Source: Schmidtea polychroa
Taxonomy: Eukaryota
Assembly: GCA_044892525.1 (NCBI GenBank)
Contig: CM097887.1
Coordinates: 101,162,397-101,226,396, forward strand
Length of the DNA stretch: 64,000 bases
Direction: 5' to 3'
Shown here: piece by piece, positions 4,230-41,890 of the stretch
Position numbering within the stretch: the stretch's first letter is position 1
Layout: every line of letters starts with the position of its first letter
Made by a program: the position numbers and the translations under genes
Notes under the pieces: generated by a model
Database searches by the model: none
What the model saw: only the letters and a program-made list of their open reading frames with translations
What the model was told of the DNA's origin: nothing

Positions 4230-4470
4230 TTATTACGACATTATTGGCGAAAAGACCTAACTGTAGCACCTGCGATTCGAGAAATCTATAACTTGGAAGG
4301 CAATGTGCTCAAAGTGTGCTCAGTGGTGGATTAGTGGATATTAGGAACGTTCAGATCTACCACCAGTGATGAAAAAAGAGGTTTCGTCTCCTGGTGGAGC
4401 AATAGTCTAGTTGGTTATTCTCAAAGTACCATTGTTCGTCATCTGCATAACTTTGGTTTGTAAATAAAAA
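4230..4470 (+). pseudogene. Possible mariner transposase N-terminal remnant
   Basis: Degenerate AIREIY and SQSTIVRHLHNFGL segments resemble mariner HTH regions. Confidence 0.3.
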
Positions 4471-10856: not shown

Positions 10857-13800
10857 TGTTGGGCTAAAACGTGGAGTTTCGAAAACTGGAGCGAATAGAA
10901 AAGTAATCCTTGAAAAATAAACGAAATAAAATAAAAATATAAAGTACCATCAAATTCTCACTAATAAATCAAAAAGGAACAATAAAATATCAATAAGAGA
11001 ATAAGAATAAGTAAAACAAACTAAATAAAACCCAATAAACCCCTTGAGATTTAGAAATAAAGCGATTTAGGACCCAGCAGATGAAATAGAATAAAATAAG
11101 TAAAAAAGTGACAACAAATAAACGAGAAATTTAAGAAATAAATAAAAAATAAAACTATCTTTAAGTCTAATTAAAACAAAAAATTATATTACAATAAAGT
11201 AGCAATAAATCCACAGGAAAAATAGGAGGAAAATAATAAAAATAAGAAAATAAATAAAATAATAATAAGAAATAAGTTAAGTCATTAAAATCTAATATAT
11301 TATAATAAAAAACATAAAAATAATAATAAATAGTAAAAATACAAACAAGTCGTGTCCTGATTGGACGAAAAATAATATATAAGGAACGGAAAATATCTGT
11401 AGAGTACCACTTTTAAAAAATATTCTACAGGTAAACTTTGGTTCGTTATGACCACTTTTAAAAAATATTCTACAGACTTGACAGATTTCGGAACCTTTAA
11501 TTATCCTACAGCGAACTAGTTCAGAGATTACCAAACCAAACCGAGGAAGGAATATATAGAGGCCAAACCACAAATCCATTCGGGAAAAATTTTAAATTCA
11601 ACCGATTTAACTTCAGTTTTCGAAACTCAAGTTGCCTTTCTTCATGGTACCGGCGACTGTACCATCTGAGAACTCCCAGTGTGATGTGGACGAGTTGGAA
11701 TTGTACTGCAGTAGAGGACACCACCGTGGAAAGGTTGGTATGCCTAAGAAATCACGAACATGCTGAAAGGAGAATGTGATATGTGTAGGGTATGATATTT
11801 GTCATATTAGAGATCCACCAAGGAGACGAGGAGGTTTCGGTTAGGTAGGAGGAGCAACATCATACTCGGAGATCCAAATGATATGGTCGCCGGGTAAATT
11901 TTCTTTATGCATTTTTCTATCATTCAGTTTGATTATGGTATTGTTGATTTGGTTGAATGGAAACGAGTTGATTGGTCCCTCTTGACGGTGCAAGGAGGCG
12001 GCAGCAATGAATGCCTTCTTGGGTGTGTCGTGAGGGGTGAAGAAACTCAGTAGGTGGAACATCCAGTTGATAAGTGAAAGTTCCTTCATCAAGCGCGATC
12101 GTCTATAGAGCGTACCATCGGTTCATTTAGTCAAATCGAGATTTCCAGTAGTTGTAGAGATGATTTGAATTCCGAATGCAGGCAATTCAGAGCGAGATAG
12201 GCAGTGACGTTCGTACAGATTCGATAATAATCCACATAGCTAGGAGAAAAATTTTTTTCGTGATATTCAGCCGGTCGATCGACGTAGTTAGGAAAGAGCA
12301 GTGTTGACCATAGATTGCAAGTAAATCCAACGATTTTTCGGTGACGCACTGCGTTCGCAAGGTCCTGTCTGATTTGTGCCGTCATGATGTTAGCGGTTAC
12401 ATCCATTGTCGATGTACTCTTACGATTTGATTGTCGTCCGTGAGTCGCCATTGCCAGTGATAAAAAATCTCTCGCTGACAGGGAAGTAAACATCTTGCAG
12501 TGAAATTATCAAAATTTTTACTTCGAGCTCGCAGGCAATAGTCGCCAACGATAACAAAATCAGTTGATTTACATTAGCCAGCGTAGAGTTAGTCGACAGG
12601 AGATATCTGATAATGTCCTAGAGAAAGAGATAACGTGTCGGTTTTTCTGGGGAAATGTCAAATGGATAAGCTGATAGTCATTGATCTGAATAAATATCGT
12701 AAAGGGAAATTAGATGATAATGTTGAGCTTACCCAATAATCTACGAAGTTGTCGCCCACTCAGATTGATTAATCTGATTTTCCGATTCATCTACGACTGC
12801 TTATTTGAGGAATCTATTACGCAACCACTATTATTCCGACTTGAGTATGCACATACACACGCACCACCGTCGAATCTACATAGGGCAGTGTAAAAGTAAA
12901 TACACAATTTTTGGTGATGTAATAGCGGCATGATGATGTGAATTTTTCTAGAACGGTGAGATAATAAGATGGAGTAAAGGAATGGATTTCCCCTACACAA
13001 CTCGATATATAATAATTTATCATAACAGCATAAACCATCATTCGCGGTGATAGCCTACATACAGTTACAGATGCCACCAGGAGTAATGACACACCTACAC
13101 ATTCAGTCATAATGCATAATCACAAGTAAACGTTTTCCATGACGACGATTTCGACGCGTTATTGGAATTAATTAGATGTAGATTTAGAGCTGAATTTTTG
13201 ACTGATTACCTGATCAATTCCATAATTTTGAACGAGATAAAAACATAAATAATCTATTCCGTCGCCGTGAATTATTTCTCTGTAATTTTAGGTACGCCTA
13301 CATCGACGGATTGCCATAATGATATCGGCAAATTTTTAAATAAAAATATACTAAGGGGAACAAGGTTGAAGGGAATAAAGTAAAAGACGAGTTTTACCTG
13401 GGAATGGCCCATCCGAAAGTAAACCCAAAGGGCGAGGTTTATGTAGAGAGAATTTTTGGTGTACGAAATCCCCGTTTCCTTTTCTTAATTTACACGAATC
13501 AGGTGAAGAGATTTGAATGTTTGCAACTGAATGACTACGAATAGAGATGGATGAAGAAGTGTGTGGGTCATCGTTGGGTGGTATGTTTGATAAACCTCCA
13601 AAACCATGCCCAAAAATTTGATTTTGTTTTTTGCCACTGATAGAGGTTTTTCCGAGTAAATCTAAACAATGATTGATTTTCTAGATGGCTACATCGTCCA
13701 ACAACGCCAAAGAACTTCGCCCGTGTTTTTCTTGTGCGGACAAGAACGCGGATATCGCCCAACTGCACTTATATATCGGGGCTCTCAAAAAGAGAATTGA

Positions 13801-14984
13801 TCTCTATGAAGGAACGTGGTTCTCCCCGCCACAAATGAAAGAGGAACGCAAGAAAATTCTCCGATTAGAGCATTGCAGGGACAGCCTGCTAGAGGAAAGC
13901 CGTTGCCAGCGGCTCACCATCAAAGCGCAATCAGAAGCCCTCCATAAGGTGTATACGGAGGCAGAACTGGCTAAGCGGGTGCGAGAATTTCCCGTTCTAG
14001 ATGGGACGAATGTTTTTCCCCTTCACCACCAGTCTTCTACATCTTCCAGTTCGCACTGCCAGGGGCACGGCTCACAACTGCCGCCCATTCCAGCCCCGGT
14101 ATTGTCCAGTCACCAGCCAAAGACAGGTGGACCTACCGATCCCATCGTAGCTCCAATCTTGGTAGCACAAATCGGTACCACGAACACCGAAAACCCCCCG
14201 ACTACCCGCAAACGGAAACGGCCAACTCGAGCCGAGAAGAACCAAAAACGCCGAGATGCGATGACAGCACTCGAGACGTCCTTATCGGCGGCGAAATCAA
14301 AAATCCAAGAGATAACGTCCTCCCATTCAATCCCCTCAAAGGAAGTCTTCCGCATTGTTCCAGCTGAGGGCATCAAATACATTGTAGATAGCCGATTACC
14401 GGTCGACATAGATGAGATACTGGCCGATGGGGATAACTTTGTTTAATGTGATGTACAATTGAGCTTGATTTCCTCTTCATTGAGTTGTAAATTATCTTGT
14501 GAATTTTGCTAAGGTTATATCTTTTGACTGCTGTTGATCTGTTGGTGGTAATGATATTTTTATCGTTTCAGGGTCAATAAAATTTTCTGTTTGATTTCAG
14601 TTTTGTCGAGCTTTCATATATTTGTTTGTGCAATTAGGGTAGATGAGATAATGCTGCGGAATGAAGGTAATTAGAGTTGAAAGTCGTTCCTTTGGACCAG
14701 GATCAGACCGAGTGACACGCATGTATGTGGGTAAGTCCTTCTAAGGCACCGTAGGACCCGAACCGAGAAAGGGTTAGGAGTAGTCCTAAGGCAGGGGCTC
14801 ACCTGCTAACCTTTTCCGACCCGTGTGAGCAGCACCAACATGGAACATCACCATGGGCTCATATGTGGGAATATGCAATCAATCATTTGGAGTATGTGTA
14901 GAGAATGTATAACGGAGCCATGATGCTTGATAGGTGTGATGGAAAGGCATGTATAATTTTTTTTCTTCTCCACATACGCCAACA
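10857..14984 (+). repeat. 5' LTR (4128 bp)
   Basis: Starts TGTTGG, ends CCAACA; matches 36992-41132 at offset 26135, then 26148. Confidence 0.97.
13685..14446 (+). CDS. LTR-encoded 253-aa protein of unknown function (basic NLS-like TRKRKRPTRAEKNQKRR)
   Basis: Intact in both LTRs, ttttctag immediately before the ATG, higher GC than surrounding LTR sequence. Confidence 0.7.
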   Translation: MATSSNNAKELRPCFSCADKNADIAQLHLYIGALKKRIDLYEGTWFSPPQMKEERKKILRLEHCRDSLLEESRCQRLTIKAQSEALHKVYTEAELAKRVREFPVLDGTNVFPLHHQSSTSSSSHCQGHGSQLPPIPAPVLSSHQPKTGGPTDPIVAPILVAQIGTTNTENPPTTRKRKRPTRAEKNQKRRDAMTALETSLSAAKSKIQEITSSHSIPSKEVFRIVPAEGIKYIVDSRLPVDIDEILADGDNFV

Positions 14985-14991
14985 TGATTTT

Positions 14992-15009
14992 TGGGGGCTC
15001 AGCCGGGAT
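14992..15009 (+). promoter_or_regulatory. Primer binding site, tRNA-Pro type
   Basis: TGGGGGCTCAGCCGGGAT matches the classical tRNA-Pro PBS TGGGGGCTCGTCCGGGAT at 16/18, starting 7 nt after the 5' LTR. Confidence 0.85.
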
Positions 15010-15444
15010 TGTATATTGATTTGTTTGATTGTCTAATTTTGTGTTATGATGTGTTAGATTAACAATTTAATTAATTATGATAAAAATGGAATCGGGGCTG
15101 AAACGAATTATAGTGCAATAAAATGATACGAACTGTCTGAGTTTGAAATGGAGCATGTGGTGAATGAAACGAACCTAAATGAGTTGGAATGAATGTGATG
15201 AAGTATGATGAGAAAAGTAAACGGGAATTGGTTATTGTGATTAATTTTAACTGGTTAAAATAAAAAGGGGGACGAAAGAAAGTAAGTGATTAAAGCAAAA
15301 AGATGAAAGGGGAATTTCAAAGATCGAATAAAATACAAAAGTTAAAACACTAACGCATAAAAGTCAACGAATATTAATACAAACATAATAATATTATTTT
15401 TAATACCAGCAGGAACAAAATAATAACAACACATTCATTTAGAT

Positions 15445-15924
15445 ATGTCAGAAGCTAGACAACATCTACAACAGCTAAGCCGGTTCGTCGAAATAGAAAA
15501 TGATTCAATAAAAACATTAAGGGAAAAACTGAAACAAATAGAACTGCTAGAACAACAAAGCCACAACGCACCGCTGATATCCAAACAAAATTTTCTAACC
15601 GACAGATTAGGATCAACAAATACCGATACCGACTTGTCTATTCATTACCAATGGTTTCAGCAACGTCTCGACGACCCCGCTCTGAACATCGAATATGTGA
15701 GGATACGCGAACAAGTCAAAACTCTGTCTCAGCGGATACGAACATCAATAGTAGAGAAAGCAGCGGCCTTGAGAACCTGTAACATTTGCAGGATGCGACC
15801 TGTCAAAATTCTAATTCTACCTTGTGGGCACCTTAGCCATTGTGACGAATGCGCCGCCAGTTTAATCCGTTGCTCTATGTGCACATGCGTAATAAAAGAG
15901 AAGCACACAATCTACTTCAGTTAG
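15445..15924 (+). CDS. Coiled-coil plus C-terminal IAP-type RING-HC E3 ligase (no BIR)
   Basis: CNIC-x11-CGH-x2-CDEC-x6-CSMC ending KEKHTIYFS*, the spacing and aromatic C-terminus typical of cIAP/XIAP RINGs. Confidence 0.85.
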   Translation: MSEARQHLQQLSRFVEIENDSIKTLREKLKQIELLEQQSHNAPLISKQNFLTDRLGSTNTDTDLSIHYQWFQQRLDDPALNIEYVRIREQVKTLSQRIRTSIVEKAAALRTCNICRMRPVKILILPCGHLSHCDECAASLIRCSMCTCVIKEKHTIYFS

Positions 15925-16507
15925 GTACGCGATCGTCGCTCGGTGAAGGAAATTGGATGATTAACAATTAGATTAAACATTTTGATATTTTTGTTCCGAA
16001 TTAATTCGGTAATGTTTTGTAATGATAGCATATATTATCTGTAATGTGGAGTAAATAACTAATAAATCCTTTTTGTGTATTCATTTCATTATACGAAGTT
16101 ATAAATTGATTTGTGTTATTATAATTTTCACCATGAAGAAAGGGCATTTTAAAAATTTAAATTGATTTTTTAAAGTGGAACTAGTCCCATCATAGTGTTA
16201 AAGGGGGAGTAAACCGAGCCACCTTCGGGAGGTACGATATTGGAACCATTTGGGAAGGGACAACCGATCACCCAGAGTAAGAGATGTAAGGCGAGGTACC
16301 ATCGCGAATATTGAAAAGTTTCTGCGGTATGGCTGATCACCATACCAATGTAGAAATGGATCAATGCGATCGTTTTGCGTTTTGAGCAAGGGGGGAAAGG
16401 GGAAACCTTCCAAAGCGGTACAGATTAAGTCGACAAATAAAAGTAAAAATAGGAAGATGACAGTATAGAATAAAGACAGAAAAGGAACGGAAGCATGCAG
16501 AGTTTAG

Positions 16508-16860
16508 AGACATTAAGGCCGAGCTGTTGAAAAGTCCAGCCGGTCAGGGAAATTGAAACTGAGCTGTGAAAAGTCCAGCCAGTCGGAGACATTAAGGCCG
16601 AGCTGTTGAAAAGTCCAGCCGGTCAGGGAAATTGAAACTGAGCTGTGAAAAGTCCAGCCAGCCGGATATTAAGATCGAGTTGTTGAATAGTCCAACCGGT
16701 CAGGAGAAGAAGATTGAGCTGTTGAATAGTGCCAGCCAGTCGTAAGGCCGAGCTGTCGAGAAGTCCAGCCGGTCAGGAAAAATTAAAACTGAGCTGTGAA
16801 AAGTCCAGCCAGTTCGGAGATGAAGAAGATTGAGCTGTTGAAAAGTGCCAGCCAGTCGTA
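16508..16860 (+). repeat. Tandem array of nine 34-41-bp units (dimeric 79-bp period) in the leader
   Basis: Core gagctgt(t)gaaaagtccagcc(a/g)gtc at about 16520, 16561, 16600, 16640, 16677, 16716, 16750, 16791 and 16832. Confidence 0.92.
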
Positions 16861-18083
16861 AAGGCCTAAAGTAATAGTGAGATAGCATTCAAGCTACAAG
16901 TTGATAACATTTAAATTACTAGTGAGATGGAATATTAAAGCTAGCTAGAAGCAAATTGAGTTTGAAATATGGTATTTGAATTTAGAAAGGATTAAACGAG
17001 CTCGTAAAAGATGATAGTAAAATTCTTTGAGTAAAGAAGGAGAAACGGAAAAGGAAAATGAATTAGGAATAATAGAAACAAAGAATAAGTATGAATAGAT
17101 GACGAACCAAGGAGGAAATAATTAATTAATTGAAGGGGATCCCAGATAGGTAGATAAAGTTCTACAGAATTTTTTGTTTAAACCGGTTAAAAGAATTTTG
17201 TTTGGTTCCGGAGTAGAACCGAGTAAAAGGAAACAGAGACGAAAGAGTAAGTAAAATAGCGGAACCGCGTAAAAGGATTAAGGAAAATATGGGGAGTAAT
17301 AAGCAGTAACTGACAACGACCTATCGATATTATAAATGCTAACTATAGATAATTTATACGACTATATAGATAATTGTTACTACCCCAAATAGATAATTTA
17401 AAATCGACGAAAAATATGGGTTGATGGGTAATTATATTCCGCGAAGAAGCGTATGAGGGGAAATGAAGAGAAGTATAACAGAGGCCCTAAAACGGTGTCT
17501 GTGCTTGAATGTGGCAAAAAGGAATGATTGATTCGTGTAAGCAAAGGCAACACGATATCATATTTTCATTGTAGACATCAGTCCAACCAAGTCAATTCAG
17601 AACCAGCTCAAACGGAATCCAGAGAATATACAAACAACCCAGGAAAAGCAATTCAGAACCCGCACAAAGGAAAACAATATCAGAACCGAACTCGACCAAT
17701 TCCGCAGACGCTAACCGTAGAAAAACCCAAGTGAAAAGACAGAAAAGAGTAAAAAGAAAATCACGGATAAACCCAACCTTAGATCTTCAAGTAAGCCAGG
17801 AGACGTATTATTTTCAGGAGACGAATTAGATCAACTCAAAAGAGGACGATCATTTAGGCAGCAGAGAGGAATATCACAAGGAGCAAAAAGACCCCACAAA
17901 ACACCGATATACGATCAAGAAAACCCCACAGCCGGACATACGCCCAGTCGATCTAGAAGTAGAGAAAGTCTATCCGATATAACAAACAACCTAACCGGGT
18001 CAACAGAAGAATTATCCGTCCATAGTTTAGCTACATCACTAGAAAATTTAAAAGAAATAATAGCATTTCAAGAACCAATCAAG

Positions 18084-18986
18084 ATGAATGTAGCAAAAAC
18101 CGACGAATATAAAGAAAAATTTAGAGGCGAACCGTTCAACGGGAATGCGAACAAGTTGGCAACGTTCATAACCAATTTTGAAGTCTATATCGATGTGTGT
18201 GGATGGACGTCCGAAGCAATTAGTAAACGAATGCCTCTGTTTTTGTGCGATAGCGCACTCGAAGTGTATCTAGAAGCAAAAGAAAGAAATACGAAATTAG
18301 ACAATTGGGAAAACATCAAAACAATTTTGAGAAAAACATTCGGAGCCAGCAAACCGATAAATCAAGCGTTAGGTGAACTGGCAAGTAGAAAACAAAGGGC
18401 AAACGAGTCAATTACGTTATACGCAAGTGAATTGCGAAGATTGGCAAAGAAGGCCATGAACGGAAACTTGCCGGAGGAAAACTTAATTGGTTACTTCATA
18501 GAAGGACTGTGCCGAGAAGAGGTAAGGGCCTCGGTGGGATGTCAAATGTGTAAAACACTAGAAGAAGCTATAGATTGGGCCACAAGATGCGAACTACACC
18601 TCCCGGCACAAATGAATGTCATGCAAGAGGAGGGAAGAATCGCAACAGCAACGGTGAAAACGGAAAATGGAGATAACAATAATCATGAACCCAAGATGAA
18701 TCAGTTTATACCAGGAGCTCATCAAATCTTCAAACCACCACAAGGACGATCAAACGGGAATAACAGTGAACGCAACAACTCGAACAATGGGAACAACTTT
18801 AATAATCGACGAAATATGAACGATAACAAACAATGCCGAACATGCGGTAAACCAGGACATTGGGATAGAGATTGTTACCGAAACGCAAATTGCAATAGGT
18901 GTGGACGACGAGGACACACGGAAAATATATGCCAATCGAGAGGATGTTTTAACTGCGGTCAACCAGGTCATATCTCAAGAGACTGT
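18084..18986 (+). other. Gag region: capsid-like domain and three CCHC zinc knuckles
   Basis: FNGNANKLATFITNFEVY...MPLFLCDSALEVY gag-like segment; knuckles at 18834-18986. Confidence 0.92.
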
Positions 18987-21900: not shown

Positions 21901-24900
21901 CTGGAGAAAGATCACCAATTCTGGTAAGATGGCCGACAGGAGCCGAAATATGGACAACAAGCCAACCGTCAACTAGCTATCAGCAGCCAAATAAGCTGAG
22001 TATCGAGGAGATTATCGATAATACAACAGAAACCGAAACCGACGAACAATTCCAACGACAGAAAGGACCAACGAAAGCAACACCAGAAGGTCAAACGGAC
22101 AAAATAATAGACGAATGGAACGAATGGCTGAGAAACAACGATAGCTCATTACCAAGAACGGATAACGAGAGAAACCCGAATTATGAAAATACAAGGGAAG
22201 CCGGAACAATGATGGAAAAACGGGCAAAAGGGAGACCCAAGAAGCAAGGAGAAAAACCGGAATTTAAAACCAGAGAACAGTTGAAACAAGAACAAGGACA
22301 AGTCAGACTAGAAAAACTGGATAAAATAGTGTGGGACTTAAAAGAAGCTCAACCAACAATCGAGAAAGGTGAAAAATGGATACGGGAGCTAGTAAAAGAT
22401 ATGTTAATAATAACAAACCCGCAATTGAGACGGTTATGGCAACGAAAAGTAGCAAGCGTAGACGCCAGACAACTATGGAATACAATATCCGGAATAATTC
22501 CGAAATTAATCAAAGAGAAGACAAAAACCACTAAAACCGATTGGGAAGAGACAAGAAGAGTAATTGAACAATTAACTTTAAACGCAAACGACGACGAACA
22601 TCATTTAGTAGTATTAACGTATCTAATGTACAATTTGATGGGATTAGCAGCAAGGAAAATACCTAACAAACAATTCGCAAATCATGTAGAAATGACCGTT
22701 ACAATCATTGAAAATACAATCGAACCACATATTATCCGCGCCGGTGGGTGGAAAAGACTCATACAAGCGCCACGAAAAAACGAGCAAGAGAGATCAATGC
22801 AAATTCGGTTGAAGAAATTACTAAACGAGCTAGAATGGGAATTGCCATTGAAAGACCCAGCCAGCAGAAAAGCGTCGATTAATTCACTAATGATGACCAT
22901 GATGATATGGATGCTCTGCACCAGTGGAGCCGCGGGATTTACTATTTACGACTGTGACAATTCGATAATAGGAGAAAGATACTCCCTGAGAGATATAGAG
23001 GAATGTAGACAGGCGTCTCCGAATAAATTAGATATAGTAAAAAAGAAAGTCTCCTATCACGTATACCAAGAATCAGATTTCATTAGAACGCAAGCTAGAG
23101 AATGCGTAGTATCGAAGAAAGTGTTGGCATATTACTGTGGACAATACTCATATTCAACCCTCATATTACCTGGATTAGATAAAGAAATAGTACCTATACA
23201 ACGGGAAGACTGTAAAGAGCTTTTTGGAACCGGAGCGATGAGAATCAGGGATGGAGTAACAATACACGGACAAAGCGGAATGATCAAGACGGAAAGTATC
23301 TATGTAGCCGGACGAGTAAAATCAACTGATGGATCATGTAACGGAGGCACATATACGATCAGAGGAGAGGTGATATCAGGAGTAGTAGTAATTGAGTCCT
23401 ACACAGTGGAGTTGAAGGAATACGAAGCACAATTCGACGCAAACAACTATCAAATGAAAACCAACCCAGCATGCAGAGCTACGGAAAACGTGTGTAGAAC
23501 GGGGATTTCGACTATAATATATGAAGCTAACACCCAAAAATGCCGACTCCAATTGTTAAAAAGTGCTCTATTCAATGAAGTAAAAGGAGAAATTTACGAA
23601 AACGAGGATGACGATGAAGAGAATGGAAACGTAAGGATGCGAAATGGGAAACCAGTCCCACCATCCCCCAAAGAAAAGAGACTCACAACACAAAAAACAC
23701 CAACGGCATTAATTACAGATGACCCAGATATCGGTATGAGATTTATCAGAGAGAAAGAGACCACCAAATGTGACAGCATAGTATATCGGACGAATTACGC
23801 AGGTATCTACATGTCAAGGCAAGTAATAGACCGAGCAGTGGGAAAGGTAGCAACAGAGGACGTAAAATTGTACCTGTACGCCAATAACAAAATGGATTTT
23901 TTATTTCATCGAGGACAAACGACAATGCAAAAAGTGTATTACGATCTTATACAAAATGACTGTTCATTGAATAAAGAGATACTAAAAACAAAATTAGCCA
24001 TCGCAATAACACACCCAGATAACACAATGCCATCACTCCCGTTACCGGATGGACACTTTGGTAGAATGGTGGGAGAGGTAATGTATACATATGCATGTAC
24101 CAAGACATTTGCGCGACTGCCAAGAAAGCCCACAATTCCACCAGGGAAATGCGCAAACGAGTTGGAAATTAGTTACAAAGGGCGAAACAGATTCGTTCAA
24201 CCCGTCACTAGGATAATGAACCCAATTGGATTTTATCCAAACACCTTTAACTGTTCAAATGCATACGGACCGTTATATGAAAAACCCGATGGGAAATGGA
24301 TAATGTTACCAGTAAAAACCGAAGTACAAGAGCCTAAAAAGTTTGGATTAATAGAACTCGCAACAGAACAAGATTTCAAACCAATTGATGTGTCAAAGGC
24401 TGGTATGTACTCACCAGAGGATTTAGAAACGGCACGATTAAACGTATTATTCCCAGCAAGACGGGAATCCATTCTATCGAATATGGTTACCATAACTGGG
24501 GGAACGAATTTCCAGTCAGGCCCCAATTACGAACTATTATTGTCACCTGATCATTTTCAACAAGCCACGTCAAACATGATGAAAGCAATGTGGGGAAGAT
24601 TTCTAGTATTCGGTCAAATGATGGCAGGAATATTGGGAATCATTCTTATTATCCAGATTGTTAGAGTAATATTGACTCAAATGTTGGCGTGTTTTGATAT
24701 CTATAAGAGAGAAAAGAAAGTAAATTGGAAGTTGATAGTAGGTTTTCTACCATTTTTGGCAAAAACAATGGTGTTGCACGGTCATTCTAAAGACATACAT
24801 AGAATAAAACGATTGATCAAAATACTGACAAAAATAAAAGGAACTGACGAGGAAGTCGGTAGACGATTTCGGAAAACCATGTATGATGAAGCAACAAGAG

Positions 24901-27900: not shown

Positions 27901-30900
27901 ATTTGACAAAATTCCCCGAAGCATTCGCAATGGCAGATCAGAAAGCAAGAACAATCGCAAAAATACTAGTAGAGGAGATATGCTGTCGATATGGAACACC
28001 AAAACAGATACTAACTGATCAAGGGACAAATTTCATGAGCGAAATAATGAGCGAAGTCACCAATTACTTCAAGATTGCAAAATTAAGAACATCACCGTAC
28101 CATCCACAAACTAATGGTATGACAGAAAGATTCAATGGAACACTGATTCAAATGTTATCAAATTATGTCGATCGTCATCAACGAGACTGGGATGAATATA
28201 TAAAATTATGTCTAATGGCTTACAGAATGTCGATTCACGCGTCCACAAAGATGAGTCCGTTCAAGTTGATGTACGGCAGAGAATGCAATATGCCAATGGA
28301 TTTGGAGTATCAGCCACCAATATCACAGTATATGGAAATAGACGATTATGTAACCAAGTTCAAGGAAAGAATGCAGGAAATCTGGGAAACTGCAGGATTG
28401 AATATAAAATTTTATCAAGAAAGCTACAAAGAGTTACATGATAGAAAGAAAAACGTCAAACAGCATACGTTCCAAACGGGCGATTGGGTGATGATCGAAA
28501 CACCAGAATTAATTCCAGGAACCACCAAAAAATTACAACGAAACGGTAAAGGTCCGTATGAGATTCTATTCGTCGGAGAAACTAATGTAAGAGTACGATT
28601 AGTGAACAACCCTTTTACAAGACCAATATACGTAAATGTTGCACGATGTAAGCCAATTCCGAAAACCGCCACCAGTCAGCCAGAAGGACGTACATTAACG
28701 ACAAGATCACAAACGTATAGAATAAACATGTTACAGCAGATAAACGAACCAACAGGTAATCGATTAGGGTTACAACCATCAGAAGCCGAGAAAATCATAA
28801 AGGAAGTAAAAGTTAAAATGCCCGGATGGGCAGAAGACAGATTAGATTTTGAGATATTGGGAGGTCTGCTAACAATGATAGAAAACTATGCAAATCGAGA
28901 AAGAACACACCCATTACTTAGGGTAGTAAAAAGTCAATGGCCTATATTATTTACGATCACAGACCATTATGGAGATACACCGCTGCACAAACTTTTAAAG
29001 GTCGGGAATAATGAACAAATACTGGAAACGATCGAAGCATTTCGCGACTGTAACATTTCGACGGATCAAGAAAACAACCAAGGTTACACTCCATTAATGA
29101 TAGCAGCCAATCGGGATAAAGCTAAAGATATTATCATCGCATTACTCGAAACTGGGTCAAAGATAACCACACAAGATCACAACCAGAAAAATGCACTACA
29201 TCATGCAATCGAAGGGAAAAGTACGGAAGCCTTCATAATCTTAGTAGATCTATTATCATATGAGGATAATAGGGAGATAGGAAACATGTATGACGGGTTA
29301 TTAACTGCAATCAAAGAGAAATTAATAACAATTGCTGGATTACTAATTGCATGGAGGAACCCGATAAAAAACGATTATATGGTAGATATAAACGAAACAT
29401 TTACCAGAGGAGAAAACACCTTGATGAGAGAAGCGATGAGAGGACATCACCTATTCGAAATTCCAAATCAACTACTACAACGTGGCATAAAGTTCTCAAA
29501 TCACAAAGACGAACAACTAATCAGAAAACGAATTACCAACTTCGAAAAAGCTATATCTCAATTTACCGATAAAGTACAAGTAAAATTTTGGGAAACCGTG
29601 AGTGTTTTACATATGATGGAAACTATGAACAAAATTCGAGAAAACTACCTAAGTATTATTCAAGTTCTAACAGCAGAGGAACGCATTAACAATTCGAACA
29701 AGAAAAAGATAAAAATGAAGAAAGTAAAAGCAAGAGAGTCTGAGGAACAAGTCGATCAACCAATAACCGATATAGCAACAACAAGTAAACCAAAGACAAT
29801 AAACTCCGACCAAGAGATAGTAGTACGTAAGGCTAAAGAAGTATTCTTTGAAGAAATGCAAGATCTATCCGATGAAGCGATACTAGCAAAAATAACCAAA
29901 ACAGTACACACCTACGCAAGAGATCAGACCACAAATCTAGACATAGGAAAAATAAAAACATTTATACCACTAGCATTCACCTTACCAACAAAAGACTCAA
30001 GAACACCATTACAACAAGCCATTTTAGCAGCAAAAGAGAACAGAGCAATAACCATCATAAGAATCCTTAGAGACTTCGGAGAAAAATCTAATGCAAAAAA
30101 TGAACAAGGAGAAACAGCAATGATGTATGCAGCAATAACAAAGATACACCCGAAAACCTTACATATACTACATCAATCAGGTTCGAGACTTGACGAAATA
30201 TCAAACGAAGGAAATTCTACCATGGATTGGGCAACAATACAACCAAACTTGGAAATGATTAGATTCATTTGTAAAAATGCTATAAGAGCTGAGGTAGAAA
30301 ATATCTGTAAAAACACGTCACAATTCCAATGGAACACGATACGGATGAACTTAGAAGCCATGAAGTTATTGCTAACATGGAAAATACCACAAAGCAATAA
30401 ATATGCAATAAATATAAATGAGTTCTACGAAAACGGAGAAAATGCTATGGTTAAAAATACACTAACAAAAGGAGGAACTCCGAAAATCATAATGATCGTA
30501 TTGAACAGAGAGGACCTCAAATTCACGCAAAATCTAAACGAACAAAAGCGAATCGGAAAACATCGCCGTATACAATTGAGAGAACTGGTAAAAGAATGGA
30601 ATAGAAAGAGACATGTAGCAACAGGCAGAAAGGAGTTCGAATTCGAGGCAAAATTAGCAAGAAACAGAGTGCTAACGGCATACCGCAGATTGTTGAATGA
30701 TATAAATGTCGAGGACGACATTTTAAACGATAGCGGGGGAGATAAAGACGATAAAGACGACGATAATAATGAAAAAGGTCGAAACGGGAATAAAGAGAAA
30801 GAGAAATCAGAGGAGAATAATCAAGAAAATAACGACGCGAGTAAGAAAAAAGAGGAAAATAACCCGAGAAACCGAATAAAGCAAGAAGAAAAGACGAATA

Positions 30901-36760: not shown

Positions 36761-36991
36761 CATCGACCATTCATAAACTTTGTGTGTATAAATCCGGTCA
36801 CCTAAAGTGGCCACTGCTTGCTTATATTTGTCCTTTTATCTGTTTAATTAAAGTATTATTTAGTTATTTTAATTTTATGTTTGTGTGAATGTTGACCGTG
36901 AAATTAGTTGTTATGCCGAAAGAAGGTATGATTTAAAAATATGATATTATGTGAATTGCGGGGCGCAATTTTAACGGGCCCCGGAGTGATT

Positions 36992-39900
36992 TGTTGGGCT
37001 AAAACGTGGAGTTTCGAAAACTGGAGCGAATAGAAAAGTAATCCTTGAAAAATAAACGAAATAAAATAAAAATATAAAGTACCATCAAATTCTCACTAAT
37101 AAATCAAAAAGGAACAATAAAATATCAATAAGAGAATAAGAATAAGTAAAACAAACTAAATAAAACCCAATAAACCCCTTGAGATTTAGAAATAAAGCGA
37201 TTTAGGACCCAGCAGATGAAATAGAATAAAATAAGTAAAAAAGTGACAACAAATAAACGAGAAATTTAAGAAATAAATAAAAAATAAAACTATCTTTAAG
37301 TCTAATTAAAACAAAAAATTATATTACAATAAAGTAGCAATAAATCCACAGGAAAAATAGGAGGAAAATAATAAAAATAAGAAAATAAATAAAATAATAA
37401 TAAGAAATAAGTTAAGTCATTAAAATCTAATATATTATAATAAAAAACATAAAAATAATAATAAATAGTAAAAATACAAACAAGTCGTGTCCTGATTGGA
37501 CGAAAAATAATATATAAGGAACGGAAAATATCTGTAGAGTACCACTTTTAAAAAATATTCTACAGGTAAACTTTGGTTCGTTATGACCACTTTTAAAAAA
37601 TATTCTACAGACTTGACAGATTTCGGAACCTTTAATTATCCTACAGCGAACTAGTTCAGAGATTACCAAACCAAACCGAGGAAGGAATATATAGAGGCCA
37701 AACCACAAATCCATTCGGGAAAAATTTTAAATTCAACCGATTTAACTTCAGTTTTCGAAACTCAAGTTGCCTTTCTTCATGGTACCGGCGACTGTACCAT
37801 CTGAGAACTCCCAGTGTGATGTGGACGAGTTGGAATTGTACTGCAGTAGAGGACACCACCGTGGAAAGGTTGGTATGCCTAAGAAATCACGAACATGCTG
37901 AAAGGAGAATGTGATATGTGTAGGGTATGATATTTGTCATATTAGAGATCCACCAAGGAGACGAGGAGGTTTCGGTTAGGTAGGAGGAGCAACATCATAC
38001 TCGGAGATCCAAATGATATGGTCGCCGGGTAAATTTTCTTTATGCATTTTTCTATCATTCAGTTTGATTATGGTATTGTTGATTTGGTTGAATGGAAACG
38101 AGTTGATTGGTCCCTCTTGACGGTGCAAGGAGGCGGCAGCAATGAATGCCTTCTTGGGTGTGTCGTGAGGGGTGAAGAAACTCAGTAGGTGGAACATCCA
38201 GTTGATAAGTGAAAGTTCCTTCATCAAGCGCGATCGTCTATAGAGCGTACCATCGGTTCATTTAGTCAAATCGAGATTTCCAGTAGTTGTAGAGATGATT
38301 TGAATTCCGAATGCAGGCAATTCAGAGCGAGATAGGCAGTGACGTTCGTACAGATTCGATAATAATCCACATAGCTAGGAGAAAAATTTTTTTCGTGATA
38401 TTCAGCCGGTCGATCGACGTAGTTAGGAAAGAGCAGTGTTGACCATAGATTGCAAGTAAATCCAACGATTTTTCGGTGACGCACTGCGTTCGCAAGGTCC
38501 TGTCTGATTTGTGCCGTCATGATGTTAGCGGTTACATCCATTGTCGATGTACTCTTACGATTTGATTGTCGTCCGTGAGTCGCCATTGCCAGTGATAAAA
38601 AATCTCTCGCTGACAGGGAAGTAAACATCTTGCAGTGAAATTATCAAAATTTTTACTTCGAGCTCGCAGGCAATAGTCGCCAACGATAACAAAATCAGTT
38701 GATTTACATTAGCCAGCGTAGAGTTAGTCGACAGGAGATATCTGATAATGTCCTAGAGAAAGAGATAACGTGTCGGTTTTTCTGGGGAAATGTCAAATGG
38801 ATAAGCTGATAGTCATTGATCTGAATAAATATCGTAAAGGGAAATTAGATGATAATGTTGAGCTTACCCAATAATCTACGAAGTTGTCGCCCACTCAGAT
38901 TGATTAATCTGATTTTCCGATTCATCTACGACTGCTTATTTGAGGAATCTATTACGCAACCACTATTATTCCGACTTGAGTATGCACATACACACGCACC
39001 ACCGTCGAATCTACATAGGGCAGTGTAAAAGTAAATACACAATTTTTGGTGATGTAATAGCGGCATGATGATGTGAATTTTTCTAGAACGGTGAGATAAT
39101 AAGATGGAGTAAAGGAATGGATTTCCCCTACACAACTCGATATATAATAATTTATCATAACAGCATAAACCATCATTCGCGGTGATAGCCTACATACAGT
39201 TACAGATGCCACCAGGAGTAATGACACACCTACACATTCAGTCATAATGCATAATCACAAGTAAACGTTTTCCATGACGACGATTTCGGAATTAATTAGA
39301 ATTAATTAATTGGAATTAATTAGATGTAGATTTAGAGCTGAATTTTCGACTGATTACCTGATCAATTCCATAATTTTGAACGAGATAAAAACATAAATAA
39401 TCTATTCCGTCGCCGTGAATTATTTCTCTGTAATTTTAGGTACGCCTACATCGACGGATTGCCATAATGATATCGGCAAATTTTTAAATAAAAATATACT
39501 AAGGGGAACAAGGTTGAAGGGAATAAAGTAAAAGACGAGTTTTACCTGGGAATGGCCCATCCGAAAGTAAACCCAAAGGGCGAGGTTTATGTAGAGAGAA
39601 TTTTTGGTGTACGAAATCCCCGTTTCCTTTTCTTAATTTACACGAATCAGGTGAAGAGATTTGAATGTTTGCAACTGAATGACTACGAATAGAGATGGAT
39701 GAAGAAGTGTGTGGGTCATCGTTGGGTGGTATGTTTGATAAACCTCCAAAACCATGCCCAAAAATTTGATTTTGTTTTTTGCCACTGATAGAGGTTTTTC
39801 CGAGTAAATCTAAACAATGATTGATTTTCTAGATGGCTACATCGTCCAACAACGCCAAAGAACTTCGCCCGTGTTTTTCTTGTGCGGACAAGAACGCGGA

Positions 39901-41132
39901 TATCGCCCAACTGCACTTATATATCGGGGCTCTCAAAAAGAGAATTGATCTCTATGAAGGAACGTGGTTCTCCCCGCCACAAATGAAAGAGGAACGCAAG
40001 AAAATTCTCCGATTAGAGCATTGCAGGGACAGCCTGCTAGAGGAAAGCCGTTGCCAGCGGCTCACCATCAAAGCGCAATCAGAAGCCCTCCATAAGGTGT
40101 ATACGGAGGCAGAACTGGCTAAGCGGGTGCGAGAATTTCCCGTTCTAGATGGGACGAATGTTTTTCCCCTTCACCACCAGTCTTCTACATCTTCCAGTTC
40201 GCACTGCCAGGGGCACGGCTCACAACTGCCGCCCATTCCAGCCCCGGTATTGTCCAGTCACCAGCCAAAGACAGGTGGACCTACCGATCCCATCGTAGCT
40301 CCAATCTTGGTAGCACAAATCGGTACCACGAACACCGAAAACCCCCCGACTACCCGCAAACGGAAACGGCCAACTCGAGCCGAGAAGAACCAAAAACGCC
40401 GAGATGCGATGACAGCACTCGAGACGTCCTTATCGGCGGCGAAATCAAAAATCCAAGAGATAACGTCCTCCCATTCAATCCCCTCAAAGGAAGTCTTCCG
40501 CATTGTTCCAGCTGAGGGCATCAAATACATTATAGATAGCCGATTACCGGTCGACATAGATGAGATACTGGCCGATGGGGATAACTTTGTTTAATGTGAT
40601 GTACAATTGAGCTTGATTTCCTCTTCATTGAGTTGTAAATTATCTTGTGAATTTTGCTAAGGTTATATCTTTTGACTGCTGTTGATCTGTTGGTGGTAAT
40701 GATATTTTTATCGTTTCAGGGTCAATAAAATTTTCTGTTTGATTTCAGTTTTGTCGAGCTTTCATATATTTGTTTGTGCAATTAGGGTAGATGAGATAAT
40801 GCTGCGGAATGAAGGTAATTAGAGTTGAAAGTCGTTCCTTTGGACCAGGATCAGACCGAGTGACACGCATGTATGTGGGTAAGTCCTTCTAAGGCACCGT
40901 AGGACCCGAACCGAGAAAGGGTTAGGAGTAGTCCTAAGGCAGGGGCTCACCTGCTAACCTTTTCCGACCCGTGTGAGCAGCACCAACATGGAACATCACC
41001 ATGGGCTCATATGTGGGAATATGCAATCAATCATTTGGAGTATGTGTAGAGAATGTATAACGGAGCCATGATGCTTGATAGGTGTGATGGAAAGGCATGT
41101 ATAATTTTTTTTCTTCTCCACATACGCCAACA
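36992..41132 (+). repeat. 3' LTR (4141 bp)
   Basis: TGTTGG...CCAACA; near-identical to the 5' LTR. Confidence 0.97.
39833..40594 (+). CDS. Second copy of the LTR-encoded 253-aa ORF
   Basis: Differs from 13685-14446 by one residue (YIVDS vs YIIDS). Confidence 0.7.
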   Translation: MATSSNNAKELRPCFSCADKNADIAQLHLYIGALKKRIDLYEGTWFSPPQMKEERKKILRLEHCRDSLLEESRCQRLTIKAQSEALHKVYTEAELAKRVREFPVLDGTNVFPLHHQSSTSSSSHCQGHGSQLPPIPAPVLSSHQPKTGGPTDPIVAPILVAQIGTTNTENPPTTRKRKRPTRAEKNQKRRDAMTALETSLSAAKSKIQEITSSHSIPSKEVFRIVPAEGIKYIIDSRLPVDIDEILADGDNFV

Positions 41133-41890
41133 TTAGAAATTTTGTGAGAACCCAGCAGTCTTCTTTAAAACTTGTTTTGGGACTGCTGGGATGCTTATGT
41201 GTGGTAAAAAAATAATACGCAACAGTAGAAAAATAAATATTAAATGAATGTGTAACATACAACGAAACTAACTTTACTTTTACAAAGTTTATTGAACAAT
41301 ACAAAATTAGAAAACCTTTTCTTAAACTAATTTACTTCTAAGTTGACCGGAAATTAATTGAGAATAGTTTTCTAATTCGTCTGAGGATCTGACAATTAAT
41401 TTTAATATTTTTTAGATTTCTTAATTTGTTTCTGTGATCTTCTGTTTAGTTCTTATATTTTTTTAAAATTTTCCATTCAATTTCTAAAATTTGCTTCTGT
41501 AATCTACTATTTAATTTCACAGATTAAATCTACTGTTTAATTTATTAAATTCGTTTCTGGTATTTTAGTTGTTAATTTGTCTATCGATTTTTTTAATTTT
41601 TGTAATTTTTCATTTACTTTAGTGATAATTCACACTAATGGTTTTTTAATTTTTTTAATAATTTTAACGTAAGGTTAACAAAATAGCAACACACTACAAA
41701 TTGTAGTTACAATTTCATATAAAATGATAATAATAAAAATAACTACACTCTATTATTTGAAAGTTCCAGATCATTTAGATTTTAAAACTCACTGATTATA
41801 TAGGATTGGAACGATAATCTTGTCCGATACAAAATAACATTTATTTAACCAATAAAGGCAACATGTAAATTAAAAATTATAAGCAAAGCA

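What the first reader, a model, noticed from the sequence alone, without database searches (positions are those of the whole stretch)
10857..41132. 30-kb intact, enveloped, multi-gene Gypsy element resembling a complex endogenous virus
Seen: 30,276 bp, 4.1-kb near-identical LTRs, an unbroken 4623-aa ORF and at least seven extra sense ORFs (one per LTR, one in the leader, five at the 3' end). Established: most Ty3/Gypsy elements are 5-10 kb; only a few lineages (plant Ogre, planarian Burro) reach 20-30 kb or more. Inference: a recently active, probably infectious lineage with a gene content I cannot match to a described element. Whether it is truly undescribed needs a search.
Basis: partly seen in the sequence, partly recalled or inferred. 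Interest (0 to 1): 0.95.

Follow-up and report, generated by a model that had tools for sequence, protein, structure and literature searches.

The report
Giant Burro-type retrovirus-like element, intact
The 30-kb element is real and intact, but it belongs to the already described Burro group of giant flatworm retrovirus-like elements, which carry a viral envelope gene inside their main protein plus captured host-type signalling genes.

Summary
The element spans 10857-41132 (30,276 bp). Its two LTRs are 4.1 kb and 99.57% identical. It has a tRNA-type primer-binding site, an unbroken 4623-aa frame and further sense ORFs longer than chance gives.

The giant frame reads Gag, three CCHC knuckles, about 1300 aa with no match, a class III fusion glycoprotein, PR, RT, RNase H, IN, ankyrin repeats and a C-terminal hydrophobic stretch. 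The glycoprotein has its own signal-like stretch and membrane anchor. It matches Pfam Monjiviricetes_fusion at E 8e-72. Its model folds like chuvirus glycoproteins and herpesvirus gB.

The accessory ORFs include a full TRAF-like protein (RING, zinc finger, MATH) and a small RING protein.

This layout matches what has been published for planarian Burro/GYPSM1 elements, including env in frame between gag and pol, TRAF/MATH, ankyrin and three zinc knuckles. The AT-rich flanks fit a planarian genome.

It differs from the two published examples in three ways. ORF1 is shorter. TRAF sits in a 3' ORF. No BIR or dUTPase domain was detected.

So this is a member of a known kind, not an undescribed kind. 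I could not name the host or compare it with the catalogued Burro-1 to -4 sequences. Infectivity is untested.

The parts
10857..14984 (+). 5' LTR, 4128 bp, termini TGTTGG...CCAACA
   Evidence: blastn against the 3' LTR gives 99.57% identity; termini read.
13685..14446 (+). LTR-borne ORF, 253 aa, no family match
   Evidence: It is longer than the longest ORF in all 500 shuffles of the LTR. The copy in the 3' LTR differs by 1 aa.
14992..15010 (+). Primer-binding site candidate, 19 nt, starting 8 nt after the LTR. Its reverse complement ends in CCA and has the lengths of a tRNA 3' end (T-stem, acceptor stem, discriminator base, CCA).
   Evidence: Sequence read directly. The tRNA species was not identified, because the window holds no tRNA gene.
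15445..15924 (+). Leader ORF, 159 aa, with a C-terminal RING finger (zf-C3HC4_3)
   Evidence: Pfam E 4.5e-8. It is homologous to a 3' accessory RING ORF of the distant relative L002 (26% identity, E 7e-11; Pfam on that ORF).
16507..16866 (+). Tandem repeats in the leader (periods 39, 79 and 116 bp)
   Evidence: Tandem Repeats Finder. Tandem repeats are drawn in the published Burro maps (PMC6431247).
18084..31955 (+). Giant polyprotein ORF, 4623 aa, unbroken: Gag, three CCHC knuckles, unmatched region, Env, PR, RT, RH, IN, ankyrin repeats, hydrophobic tail
18231..18986 (+). Gag capsid-like domain (aa 50-142) and three CCHC zinc knuckles (aa 251-301)
   Evidence: Retrotrans_gag E 1e-11 and zf-CCHC E 1e-13; three CX2CX4HX4C motifs.
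22596..22751 (+). Possible Bcl-2-like stretch (aa 1505-1556), unconfirmed
   Evidence: Pfam Bcl-2 E 0.14, below the cut-off. The single-sequence model is all-helical but has pLDDT 50. The fold search gave no Bcl-2 hit. The position matches the BCL2 motif reported just upstream of env in Burro.
22878..24674 (+). Envelope glycoprotein domain in frame: signal-like hydrophobic stretch (aa 1599-1617), ectodomain with 14 Cys, membrane anchor (aa 2179-2197). Class III fusion protein fold.
   Evidence: Pfam Monjiviricetes_fusion E 8e-72. Hydropathy; Cys count. AlphaFold model with 50-sequence alignment A1 has pLDDT 82. Foldseek hits: chuvirus-like glycoproteins at E 4e-42 to 3e-37, herpesvirus gB at E 3e-14.
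25275..28163 (+). Pol: aspartic protease (DTGA), reverse transcriptase (YIDD), RNase H, integrase (HHCC and core). GPY motif follows at 28551-28559.
   Evidence: Pfam RVP, RVT_1, RT_RNaseH and _2, Integrase_H2C2 and rve. Motifs and in the alignment.
28956..30287 (+). Two ankyrin-repeat blocks after integrase (aa 3625-3722 and 3980-4068)
   Evidence: Pfam Ank_2; PDB ankyrin hits.
31758..31814 (+). Hydrophobic tail-anchor-like segment near the C-terminus of the polyprotein (aa 4559-4577)
   Evidence: Kyte-Doolittle peak of 2.07.
32573..33961 (+). TRAF-like accessory ORF, 462 aa: RING, TRAF-type zinc finger, coiled coil and MATH/TRAF-C
   Evidence: Pfam TRAF-mep_MATH E 3e-25 and zf-C3HC4. PDB TRAF3, TRAF2 and TRAF6 hits at E 3e-28 to 1e-14 cover aa 22-157 and 243-454. 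The nearest database TRAFs are only 24-29% identical.
34183..35220 (+). Accessory ORF, 345 aa, rich in E, K, R, L and Q; no family match
35395..36096 (+). Accessory ORF, 233 aa, highly charged; no family match
36152..36760 (+). Accessory ORF, 202 aa, with one hydrophobic segment (aa 105-123); no family match
36992..41132 (+). 3' LTR, 4141 bp, carrying the second copy of the 253-aa ORF at 39833-40594

Best explanation
This is a full-length, recently inserted provirus-like copy of a Burro-type giant Ty3/Gypsy element. That group is described from planarian flatworms.

Shown from sequence:
- two near-identical 4.1-kb LTRs and a tRNA-type primer-binding site
- one 4623-aa frame encoding Gag, nucleocapsid knuckles, a class III (chuvirus/gB-like) fusion glycoprotein with its own signal-like stretch and membrane anchor, protease, RT, RNase H, integrase and ankyrin repeats
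- separate sense ORFs for a TRAF-like adaptor/E3 ligase, a RING protein and four proteins with no family match

Inferred mechanism: the element is transcribed from the 5' LTR and replicates by tRNA-primed reverse transcription and integration, like other Gypsy elements. Env sits between Gag and Pol. It could be produced in two ways. In the first, an internal signal sequence threads the polyprotein across the ER membrane and a stop-transfer anchor halts it, leaving Gag and Pol on the cytosolic face, as in flavivirus-type polyproteins. In the second, a subgenomic spliced or trans-spliced mRNA starts at the methionine cluster at the signal-like stretch.

The TRAF-like, RING, ankyrin and possibly Bcl-2-like modules are most likely captured host-type regulators of ubiquitination, NF-kB-type signalling and cell death. 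They would act on the host cell in the element's favour, as similar genes do in large DNA viruses.
For: Anatomy.

Domains.

Env: Pfam E 8e-72. Signal-like stretch and TM segment. Model pLDDT 82. The fold matches chuvirus-like glycoproteins and herpesvirus gB. Free-standing sequence relatives include the Tacheng Tick Virus 4 glycoprotein.

Same gene order in relatives: G-PR-RT-RH-IN in a single frame occurs in independent relatives from environmental assemblies. These are P0163 (4844 aa), P0189 (4099 aa), P0191, P0015, P0025 and P0019, with pol 42-49% and G 31-40% identical. The layout is therefore conserved and not an assembly accident.

Agreement with the published Burro description (PMC6431247): total size over 30 kb, Gag with three CCHC knuckles, env in frame between gag and pol with mononegavirus glycoprotein hits, ankyrin repeats, MATH_TRAF_C inside ORF1 or as an accessory ORF, and tandem repeats.

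Other literature: the GAG-ENV-POL order with gB-type Env is reported for flatworm Gypsy elements (PMC13524379).

Host context: the flanks are 22-33% GC against 37-41% in the element. This fits the >70% A/T planarian genome reported with abundant Burro elements (PMC11410931).

Coding: the accessory ORFs exceed chance length, and the sense strand is A-rich throughout the internal region.
Against: No nucleotide or close protein match to a named Burro sequence could be obtained. Repbase and Dfam are not available here. The nearest proteins in 15 billion are at most 49% identical in pol and come from unnamed metagenome contigs. The host could not be named.

BIR and dUTPase motifs reported for Burro1 were not detected. 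The Bcl-2-like motif is only a sub-threshold hit.

TRAF lies 3' of the polyprotein. In Burro1 it lies inside ORF1, and in the D. tigrina element it lies upstream.

There is no perfect target-site duplication and no clear polypurine tract.

Expression, processing and the roles of the accessory genes are all inferred.
Confidence: 0.82

Rival explanations
1. This is an undescribed lineage of giant enveloped Gypsy elements that only resembles Burro through convergent gene capture.
For: No close sequence match exists in the protein collections. The TRAF position, ORF1 length (4623 aa against the published 4873 and 5140 aa) and missing BIR and dUTPase hits differ from the two published descriptions (PMC6431247). 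The polyprotein regions aa 300-1600 and 3530-4623 have no match in the distant relatives except ankyrin repeats.
Against: The whole core layout is shared with Burro: Gag with three CCHC knuckles, in-frame Env, Pol, ankyrin repeats, TRAF/MATH and RING. So are the size and the AT-rich host context. Burro-2, -3 and -4 are catalogued but could not be compared. The lack of database hits is expected, because repeat-derived proteins of planarian genomes are usually masked before annotation (my inference).
Confidence: 0.12
2. This is an assembly chimera or a nest of several elements, for example a Gypsy element plus an endogenous chuvirus glycoprotein fragment plus host genes.
For: The size is extreme and the host-like genes are unusual. 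No clean target-site duplication was found.
Against: There is one continuous 4623-aa frame with a single set of Gag, PR, RT, RH and IN domains. The element contains no N. The LTR pair has matched inverted termini. No element-derived fragments occur in the flanks. The same G-PR-RT-RH-IN fusion in one frame appears in at least six independent contigs from other samples.
Confidence: 0.02
3. This is a domesticated or decaying endogenous copy that no longer functions as a mobile element, its open frames kept for a host purpose or by chance.
For: No perfect target-site duplication and no clear polypurine tract were found. Only one copy is visible in this window.
Against: The LTRs are 99.57% identical and every ORF is open, including 13.9 kb without a stop in a sequence of about 39% GC. 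Catalytic motifs are intact. BURRO1 is described as highly abundant, active, expressed and piRNA-controlled in S. mediterranea (PMC8532177).
Confidence: 0.05

Closest known systems
Burro-1/GYPSM1 (and Burro-2 to -4) of the planarian Schmidtea mediterranea, and the Burro-like element of Dugesia (Girardia) tigrina (Jurka 2007; Grohme et al. 2018; Arkhipova and Yushenova 2019, PMC6431247)
   Same: Giant Gypsy-like LTR element of more than 30 kb. One huge ORF1 starts with Gag plus CCHC knuckles (three, as in S. mediterranea). Env lies in frame between gag and pol and hits mononegavirus fusion glycoproteins. Then come PR-RT-RH-IN and ankyrin repeats. A MATH/TRAF module is present, as are RING-type motifs, accessory ORFs and tandem repeats. 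The host is AT-rich.
   Different: ORF1 is 4623 aa, against 4873 aa (Burro1) and 5140 aa (D. tigrina). TRAF/MATH is a separate ORF downstream of ORF1, not inside ORF1 (Burro1) or upstream (D. tigrina). BIR, dUTPase, SUMO-like and midasin-like motifs were not detected with Pfam here. Bcl-2 is only sub-threshold. Nucleotide identity was not testable.
GAG-ENV-POL Ty3/gypsy 'errantiviruses' with HSV gB-type Env in Platyhelminthes, Nematoda and Bryozoa (PMC13524379)
   Same: Gypsy pol, a class III (gB-like) Env placed between gag and pol, flatworm hosts, and intact recent copies.
   Different: In that survey the elements are described as having separate ORFs. It mentions neither Burro nor planarians, and I saw no mention there of giant size or of TRAF, RING or ankyrin cargo. 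I could not check which flatworm species it covered, because its supplements are not held.
Mosquito BEL/Pao elements carrying a Chuviridae-like glycoprotein (Dezordi et al. 2020, PMC7642597)
   Same: An LTR retroelement that acquired a chuvirus-type glycoprotein as its env. This is the same glycoprotein family as here.
   Different: A different retroelement superfamily (BEL/Pao) and a different host. I took only the abstract and the eLife paper's summary of that work, so size, env placement and accessory genes were not compared.
Drosophila gypsy and other insect errantiviruses (Metaviridae)
   Same: Ty3/Gypsy pol plus an envelope gene; an endogenous-retrovirus lifestyle.
   Different: Insect errantiviruses have the order GAG-POL-ENV with an F-type Env (PMC13524379). 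From general knowledge, they are about 7-8 kb with env as a 3' ORF from a spliced mRNA and no host-like accessory genes. Here Env is class III and lies in frame between gag and pol.
Unnamed G-PR-RT-RH-IN polyproteins in environmental assemblies (P0163/L002, P0017/L003, P0016/L004, P0191/L006 from ENA ERZ25039515; P0189/L005 from JGI 3300033082)
   Same: The same glycoprotein fused upstream of PR-RT-RH-IN in one frame. Gag with CCHC lies upstream, ankyrin repeats are present, and a homologous small RING accessory ORF occurs in L002.
   Different: Only 42-49% identical in pol and 31-40% in G. They show several protease copies, an RNase_T exonuclease accessory ORF and no TRAF hit. The N- and C-terminal extensions are unrelated.
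Plant Ogre elements
   Same: Very large Ty3/Gypsy elements with long LTRs and extra ORFs.
   Different: [quoted passage not shown] No env or polyprotein cargo is described for them there.

Membership tests
Ty3/Gypsy (Metaviridae) LTR retroelement | LTR pair with short inverted termini (TG...CA) and a tRNA-type primer-binding site | tested here: met
   LTRs are 99.57% identical with termini TGTTGG...CCAACA. The 19-nt PBS candidate at 14992-15010 ends in the complement of CCA.
Ty3/Gypsy (Metaviridae) LTR retroelement | Pol order PR-RT-RNase H-IN (integrase after RT) with Gypsy-type RNase H and integrase domains and a GPY/F motif | tested here: met
   Pfam RVP, RVT_1, RT_RNaseH and _2, Integrase_H2C2 and rve occur in that order. 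DTGA, YIDD and GPY motifs are present.
Ty3/Gypsy (Metaviridae) LTR retroelement | Target-site duplication and a polypurine tract next to the 3' LTR | tested here: inconclusive
   The flanks read TAAG and TTAG, matching at 3 of 4 positions. No clear purine run abuts the 3' LTR.
Burro-type giant Gypsy elements of planarians | Total length above 30 kb with an internal region of up to about 25 kb | tested here: met
   30,276 bp in total and 22,007 bp internal. Criterion from PMC6431247.
Burro-type giant Gypsy elements of planarians | One giant ORF1 (about 4.9-5.1 thousand aa) beginning with Retrotrans_gag plus two or three CCHC knuckles | tested here: met
   The ORF is 4623 aa, somewhat shorter than the published ones. 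Gag spans aa 50-142 and there are three CCHC knuckles.
Burro-type giant Gypsy elements of planarians | env in frame between gag and pol, related to fusion glycoproteins of mononegaviruses | tested here: met
   Monjiviricetes_fusion E 8e-72 at aa 1601-2208 of the same frame. The fold matches chuvirus-like glycoproteins and gB.
Burro-type giant Gypsy elements of planarians | MATH_TRAF_C module, inside ORF1 or as an accessory ORF | tested here: met
   Separate 462-aa ORF at 32573-33961 with RING and MATH. Its position, 3' of ORF1, differs from both published cases.
Burro-type giant Gypsy elements of planarians | Ankyrin repeats in the polyprotein | tested here: met
   Two blocks after IN.
Burro-type giant Gypsy elements of planarians | BCL2-like motif immediately upstream of env | tested here: inconclusive
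   Pfam Bcl-2 E 0.14 at aa 1505-1556, the expected position. The model has pLDDT 50 and the fold search found no Bcl-2.
Burro-type giant Gypsy elements of planarians | BIR domain and a dUTPase-like domain between PR and RT (reported for Burro1 by HHpred or CDD) | tested here: not met
   Neither gave a Pfam hit in the polyprotein or in other open frames. Only a RING finger (zf-C3HC4_3) is present in the leader ORF. These are accessory motifs that vary between Burro elements, and they were reported with more sensitive profile methods than I had.
Burro-type giant Gypsy elements of planarians | Host is a planarian (Dugesiidae); nucleotide similarity to Burro-1 to -4 or GYPSM1 | not testable with these tools
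   No planarian genome or Repbase/Dfam library is at hand. The flanks at 22-33% GC fit the published >70% A/T. The Grohme et al. paper is not held.
Class III viral fusion glycoproteins (rhabdovirus G, herpesvirus gB, baculovirus GP64, chuvirus G) | Ectodomain fold with a long central helix and beta-rich fusion and PH-like domains, plus an N-terminal signal and a C-terminal membrane anchor | tested here: met
   The model has pLDDT 82 with a 48-residue central helix. Foldseek gives probability 1.00 to herpesvirus gB (top hits mostly postfusion structures) at E about 1e-14 and to chuvirus-like glycoproteins at E about 1e-42. Fusion activity itself was not tested.

The most novel reading that the evidence does not exclude
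This copy may represent a Burro lineage or host species not yet catalogued. In it, the TRAF-like gene has moved into a 3' cassette of accessory genes and each LTR carries its own protein-coding ORF. Env would be made without splicing: the 4623-aa polyprotein is threaded through the ER membrane by an internal signal sequence and stop-transfer anchor. That would be a flavivirus-like polyprotein topology in a reverse-transcribing element.
Probability: 0.2. Interest if true: 0.6.

Novelty: new member of a known kind. Interest (0 to 1): 0.35.

Why it matters
Burro-type elements are the largest LTR retroelements known. They are the only ones reported with an envelope gene fused in frame between gag and pol, and they also carry host-type ubiquitin, TRAF, ankyrin and cell-death modules. 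They bear on how retroelements acquire envelope genes from RNA viruses and how they may manipulate host signalling.

This copy adds a clean, fully open example. It gives a confident class III fold for Env, a defined signal and anchor topology, and a different placement of the TRAF gene. The kind of element and its key oddities are already in the literature, so the finding is confirmatory and not a discovery.

Tried and rejected
Steps that led nowhere:
- Exact look-up of the polyprotein and the TRAF ORF found nothing on record.
- The word-based protein search with the whole polyprotein returned only generic Gypsy pol hits. With the Env piece it returned one hit. With TRAF it returned only unnamed 24-29% identical TRAFs. 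None named the host.
- Scans of JGI metagenome contigs and IMG/VR viral contigs found no relatives.
- Rfam and ARAGORN on the window found nothing, so the tRNA matching the PBS was not identified.
- The sigma-70 promoter and terminator scan is a bacterial tool. Counts were near shuffle level, and I regard it as irrelevant to a eukaryotic LTR.
- Bcl-2 test: the PDB sequence search was empty, the single-sequence model had low confidence, and the fold search returned only designed helical repeats. The result is inconclusive.
- BIR and dUTPase gave no Pfam hit in any open frame tested.
- Accessory ORFs of 345, 233, 202 and 253 aa had no Pfam or PDB match and no counterpart in the related loci.
- Grohme et al. 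2018 is not held. Supplements of PMC8532177 and PMC13524379 are not held. BURRO probe sequences and PBS tables could therefore not be compared.

Rejected readings: assembly chimera, and a stand-alone endogenous chuvirus fragment. Reasons are given under the rival explanations.

A slip to report: while reasoning about the PBS I recalled the generic layout of a tRNA 3' end, including a generic T-loop motif, from memory. No remembered letters went into any tool call. The PBS call rests only on the window's own 19 bases ending in the complement of CCA.

Full report

Yes. Two long direct repeats bound the feature. blastn aligns 10857-14985 with 36992-41133 over 4142 columns at 99.57% identity, with 5 mismatches and 13 gap positions in 4 gaps. 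The repeats begin TGTTGG and end CCAACA, so the LTRs are 10857-14984 and 36992-41132 and the element is 30,276 bp. The internal region is 22,007 bp, and sense ORFs cover 82% of it. Neither N run of the window lies inside the element.

The ORF list confirms an unbroken 4623-aa ATG frame at 18084-31955. It also confirms a 253-aa ORF in each LTR (1 aa different between the copies), a 159-aa leader ORF, and 3' ORFs of 462, 345, 233 and 202 aa plus a marginal 119-aa one.

In 500 shuffles of each region the longest sense ORF never reached 253, 202, 233, 345 or 462 aa. The 159-aa ORF lies above the 95th percentile and the 119-aa ORF is only just above it.

The element is 37-41% GC and strongly A-rich on the sense strand. 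It sits in flanks of 22-33% GC.

Two expected features are not clean. The flanking tetranucleotides are TAAG and TTAG, not a perfect duplication. No obvious polypurine tract abuts the 3' LTR.

Eight bases after the 5' LTR lies a 19-nt stretch (14992-15010). Its reverse complement ends in CCA and has the lengths of a tRNA 3' end, so it is a plausible primer-binding site. The tRNA could not be identified.

**2. What does the giant frame encode?**

Pfam finds the following, in order:
- Retrotrans_gag, aa 50-142
- zf-CCHC; three CX2CX4HX4C knuckles at aa 251-301
- a viral fusion glycoprotein, Monjiviricetes_fusion, E 8e-72, aa 1601-2208, covering profile positions 3-579 of 653
- retroviral protease, aa 2398-2489 (DTGA)
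- RT, aa 2711-2869 (YIDD)
- RNase H, aa 2932-3061
- integrase zinc-binding and core domains, aa 3169-3360, followed by a GPY motif
- two ankyrin-repeat blocks, aa 3625-3722 and 3980-4068

The stretches aa 300-1500 and 4070-4623 have no significant match.

Hydropathy shows exactly two strong membrane-type segments. One is at aa 2179-2197, where the glycoprotein's anchor should be. The other is at aa 4559-4577, near the C-terminus. A signal-peptide-like hydrophobic stretch with a small-residue end lies at aa 1599-1617, at the first residues of the glycoprotein profile. It contains a cluster of methionines.

**3. The envelope domain**

An exhaustive HMMER search with aa 1590-2300 found 1003 relatives at E<=0.001. 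They form two groups.

The best hits (33-47% identity) are long polyproteins or their fragments from environmental assemblies. There the same glycoprotein sits upstream of PR-RT-RH-IN in one frame:
- P0163, 4844 aa
- P0189, 4099 aa
- P0191, 3003 aa
- P0015, P0025 and P0019

Pol identity to the window is 42-49% and G identity is 31-40%. One of these contigs carries prolyl-hydroxylase-type exons next to the element, so it comes from an animal genome.

The second group comprises roughly 650-aa proteins at about 20-27% identity. Where named, they are free-standing glycoproteins. Examples are the glycoprotein of Tacheng Tick Virus 4 and an endogenous copy in a beetle genome.

I aligned 50 of these (A1) and predicted the window's own domain. 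The model has mean pLDDT 82 and a 48-residue central helix flanked by beta-rich domains. Foldseek matches chuvirus-like and related negative-strand virus glycoproteins at E 4e-42 to 3e-37, with TM up to 0.6. It matches solved herpesvirus gB structures, the top hits mostly postfusion, at E about 3e-14 with probability 1.00. The domain is therefore a class III fusion glycoprotein of the chuvirus type. I made no use of the consensus line that the alignment tool printed.

**4. The accessory genes**

- The 462-aa ORF (32573-33961) is a complete TRAF-like protein. Its RING and TRAF zinc finger (aa 22-157) match TRAF6 and TRAF5. Its coiled coil and MATH/TRAF-C (aa 243-454) match TRAF3, TRAF2, TRAF1, TRAF5 and TRAF4. 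The nearest database TRAFs are only 24-29% identical.
- The 159-aa leader ORF ends in a zf-C3HC4_3 RING finger. It is homologous (E 7e-11) to a RING ORF that lies at the 3' end of the distant relative L002. A conserved accessory gene thus occupies different positions in different family members.
- The 345-aa and 233-aa ORFs are highly charged and rich in E, K, R and L. The 202-aa ORF has one hydrophobic segment. The LTR ORF has no distinguishing feature. None has a Pfam or PDB match.
- A Bcl-2 hit just upstream of Env is sub-threshold (E 0.14). Structure prediction could not confirm it.
- No BIR or dUTPase domain was detected.
- The leader carries tandem repeats at 16507-16866.

**5. Comparison with what is known**

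The review by Arkhipova and Yushenova (PMC6431247) describes planarian Burro elements. Burro1 had been described earlier as GYPSM1 by Jurka (2007) and was named by Grohme et al. (2018). The published features are:
- Gypsy-like, more than 30 kb in total, internal region up to 25 kb, thousands of copies
- one enormous ORF1 (4873 aa in S. mediterranea, 5140 aa in D. tigrina)
- MATH_TRAF_C, RING-type, BIR, BCL2 and ankyrin motifs

The MATH_TRAF_C module is inside ORF1 in one species and in an accessory ORF in the other. [quoted passage not shown]

The window's element shows the same order and the same peculiarities, with three knuckles as in Schmidtea.

Other papers agree. GAG-ENV-POL Gypsy elements with gB-type Env are reported from flatworms, nematodes and bryozoans (PMC13524379). 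Chuvirus-type glycoproteins have been captured by mosquito BEL/Pao elements (PMC7642597). BURRO1 is expressed in a tissue-enriched pattern and rises when the PIWI protein SMEDWI-2 is knocked down (PMC8532177). The S. mediterranea genome is >70% A/T with abundant >30-kb Burro elements (PMC11410931), like the flanks here.

**6. Differences and limits**

ORF1 is shorter than the two published ones. The TRAF gene lies 3' of ORF1. BIR and dUTPase were not detected, though they were originally found with more sensitive profile methods. An LTR-borne ORF is present, and I could not check this feature against the published maps.

I could not compare nucleotides with Burro-1 to -4, because no repeat library is at hand and Grohme et al. 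is not held. I could not name the host. The large protein collections hold nothing closer than 49% in pol. Two contig scans found nothing.

The element may therefore be one of the catalogued Burro families or a relative from another planarian. Either way it is a member of a known kind.

**7. How it most likely works**

Shown from sequence: all parts needed for LTR-retroelement replication are present and open, with intact catalytic motifs. Env has a signal, an ectodomain and an anchor.

Inferred:
- Transcription runs from the 5' LTR, followed by tRNA-primed reverse transcription and integration.
- Gag-X-Env-Pol-Ank is translated as one chain. The internal signal sends the Env ectodomain into the ER lumen and the anchor stops transfer. 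Gag and Pol then stay cytosolic but membrane-tethered until the protease cuts.
- Alternatively, a subgenomic mRNA begins at the methionine cluster of the signal-like stretch. The distant relative P0163 has no methionine at the start of its equivalent signal-like stretch, which leans toward the polyprotein route. This is weak evidence.
- The TRAF-like, RING and ankyrin modules, and perhaps a Bcl-2-like one, plausibly act on host ubiquitination, NF-kB-type signalling and cell death.
- With 5 substitutions in about 4.1 kb between the LTRs (K about 0.0012), the insertion is recent. No planarian rate is available to me, so I give no date.

**8. Rivals**

- An undescribed convergent lineage: possible but unlikely, given the shared idiosyncratic layout.
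- An assembly chimera: very unlikely. There is one frame and one domain set, no N, and the same fusion occurs in six independent contigs.
- A domesticated or dead copy: unlikely, given the open frames and LTR identity.

**9. Verdict**

It is a Burro-type element.

Interest is moderate to low for a specialist, because the striking features are already published. The modest additions here are a confident class III fold for Env, its signal and anchor topology inside the polyprotein, a RING accessory gene conserved across distant relatives, and the 3' position of TRAF.

Noticed in passing
window 1-2250 (+): A 746-aa open frame with a reverse transcriptase domain (RVT_1, E 4e-14) and a weak GIY-YIG hit (E 0.025). 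This is a Penelope-like retroelement fragment cut by the window start. Its first 1174 bp are 3.7 copies of a 321-bp, in-frame (107-codon) unit at 100% identity.
   Followed up: partly
window 46550-46858 (+): A 103-aa open frame with a Major Facilitator Superfamily hit (MFS_1, E 1e-6). It is probably an exon of a host transporter gene 5 kb downstream of the element. It lies close to the N run at 47449-47696, which was left untouched.
   Followed up: no
window 59513-64000: A 243-bp satellite with 18.5 copies at 98% identity, running to the window end.
   Followed up: no
P0019 (NCBI HBK71150.1): A 2627-aa G-PR-RT-IN polyprotein of this family is deposited as a hypothetical protein of a Flavobacteriaceae metagenome-assembled genome. 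This is almost certainly a eukaryotic retroelement contig mis-binned into a bacterial MAG.
   Followed up: no
L002 21702-22841; L006 16542-17882; P0163: Distant relatives carry an RNase_T-type exonuclease accessory ORF 3' of pol. P0163 has three or four aspartic-protease domains, with ankyrin repeats before RT and not after IN. The accessory cargo of this family is highly fluid.
   Followed up: partly
window 10857-12300 vs 12301-14984: The 5' third of the LTR is more AT-rich (34% GC) than the rest (42% GC), and the 253-aa ORF sits in the GC-richer part. The U3/R/U5 boundaries are unknown, so it is unclear which LTR copy could express the ORF.
   Followed up: no
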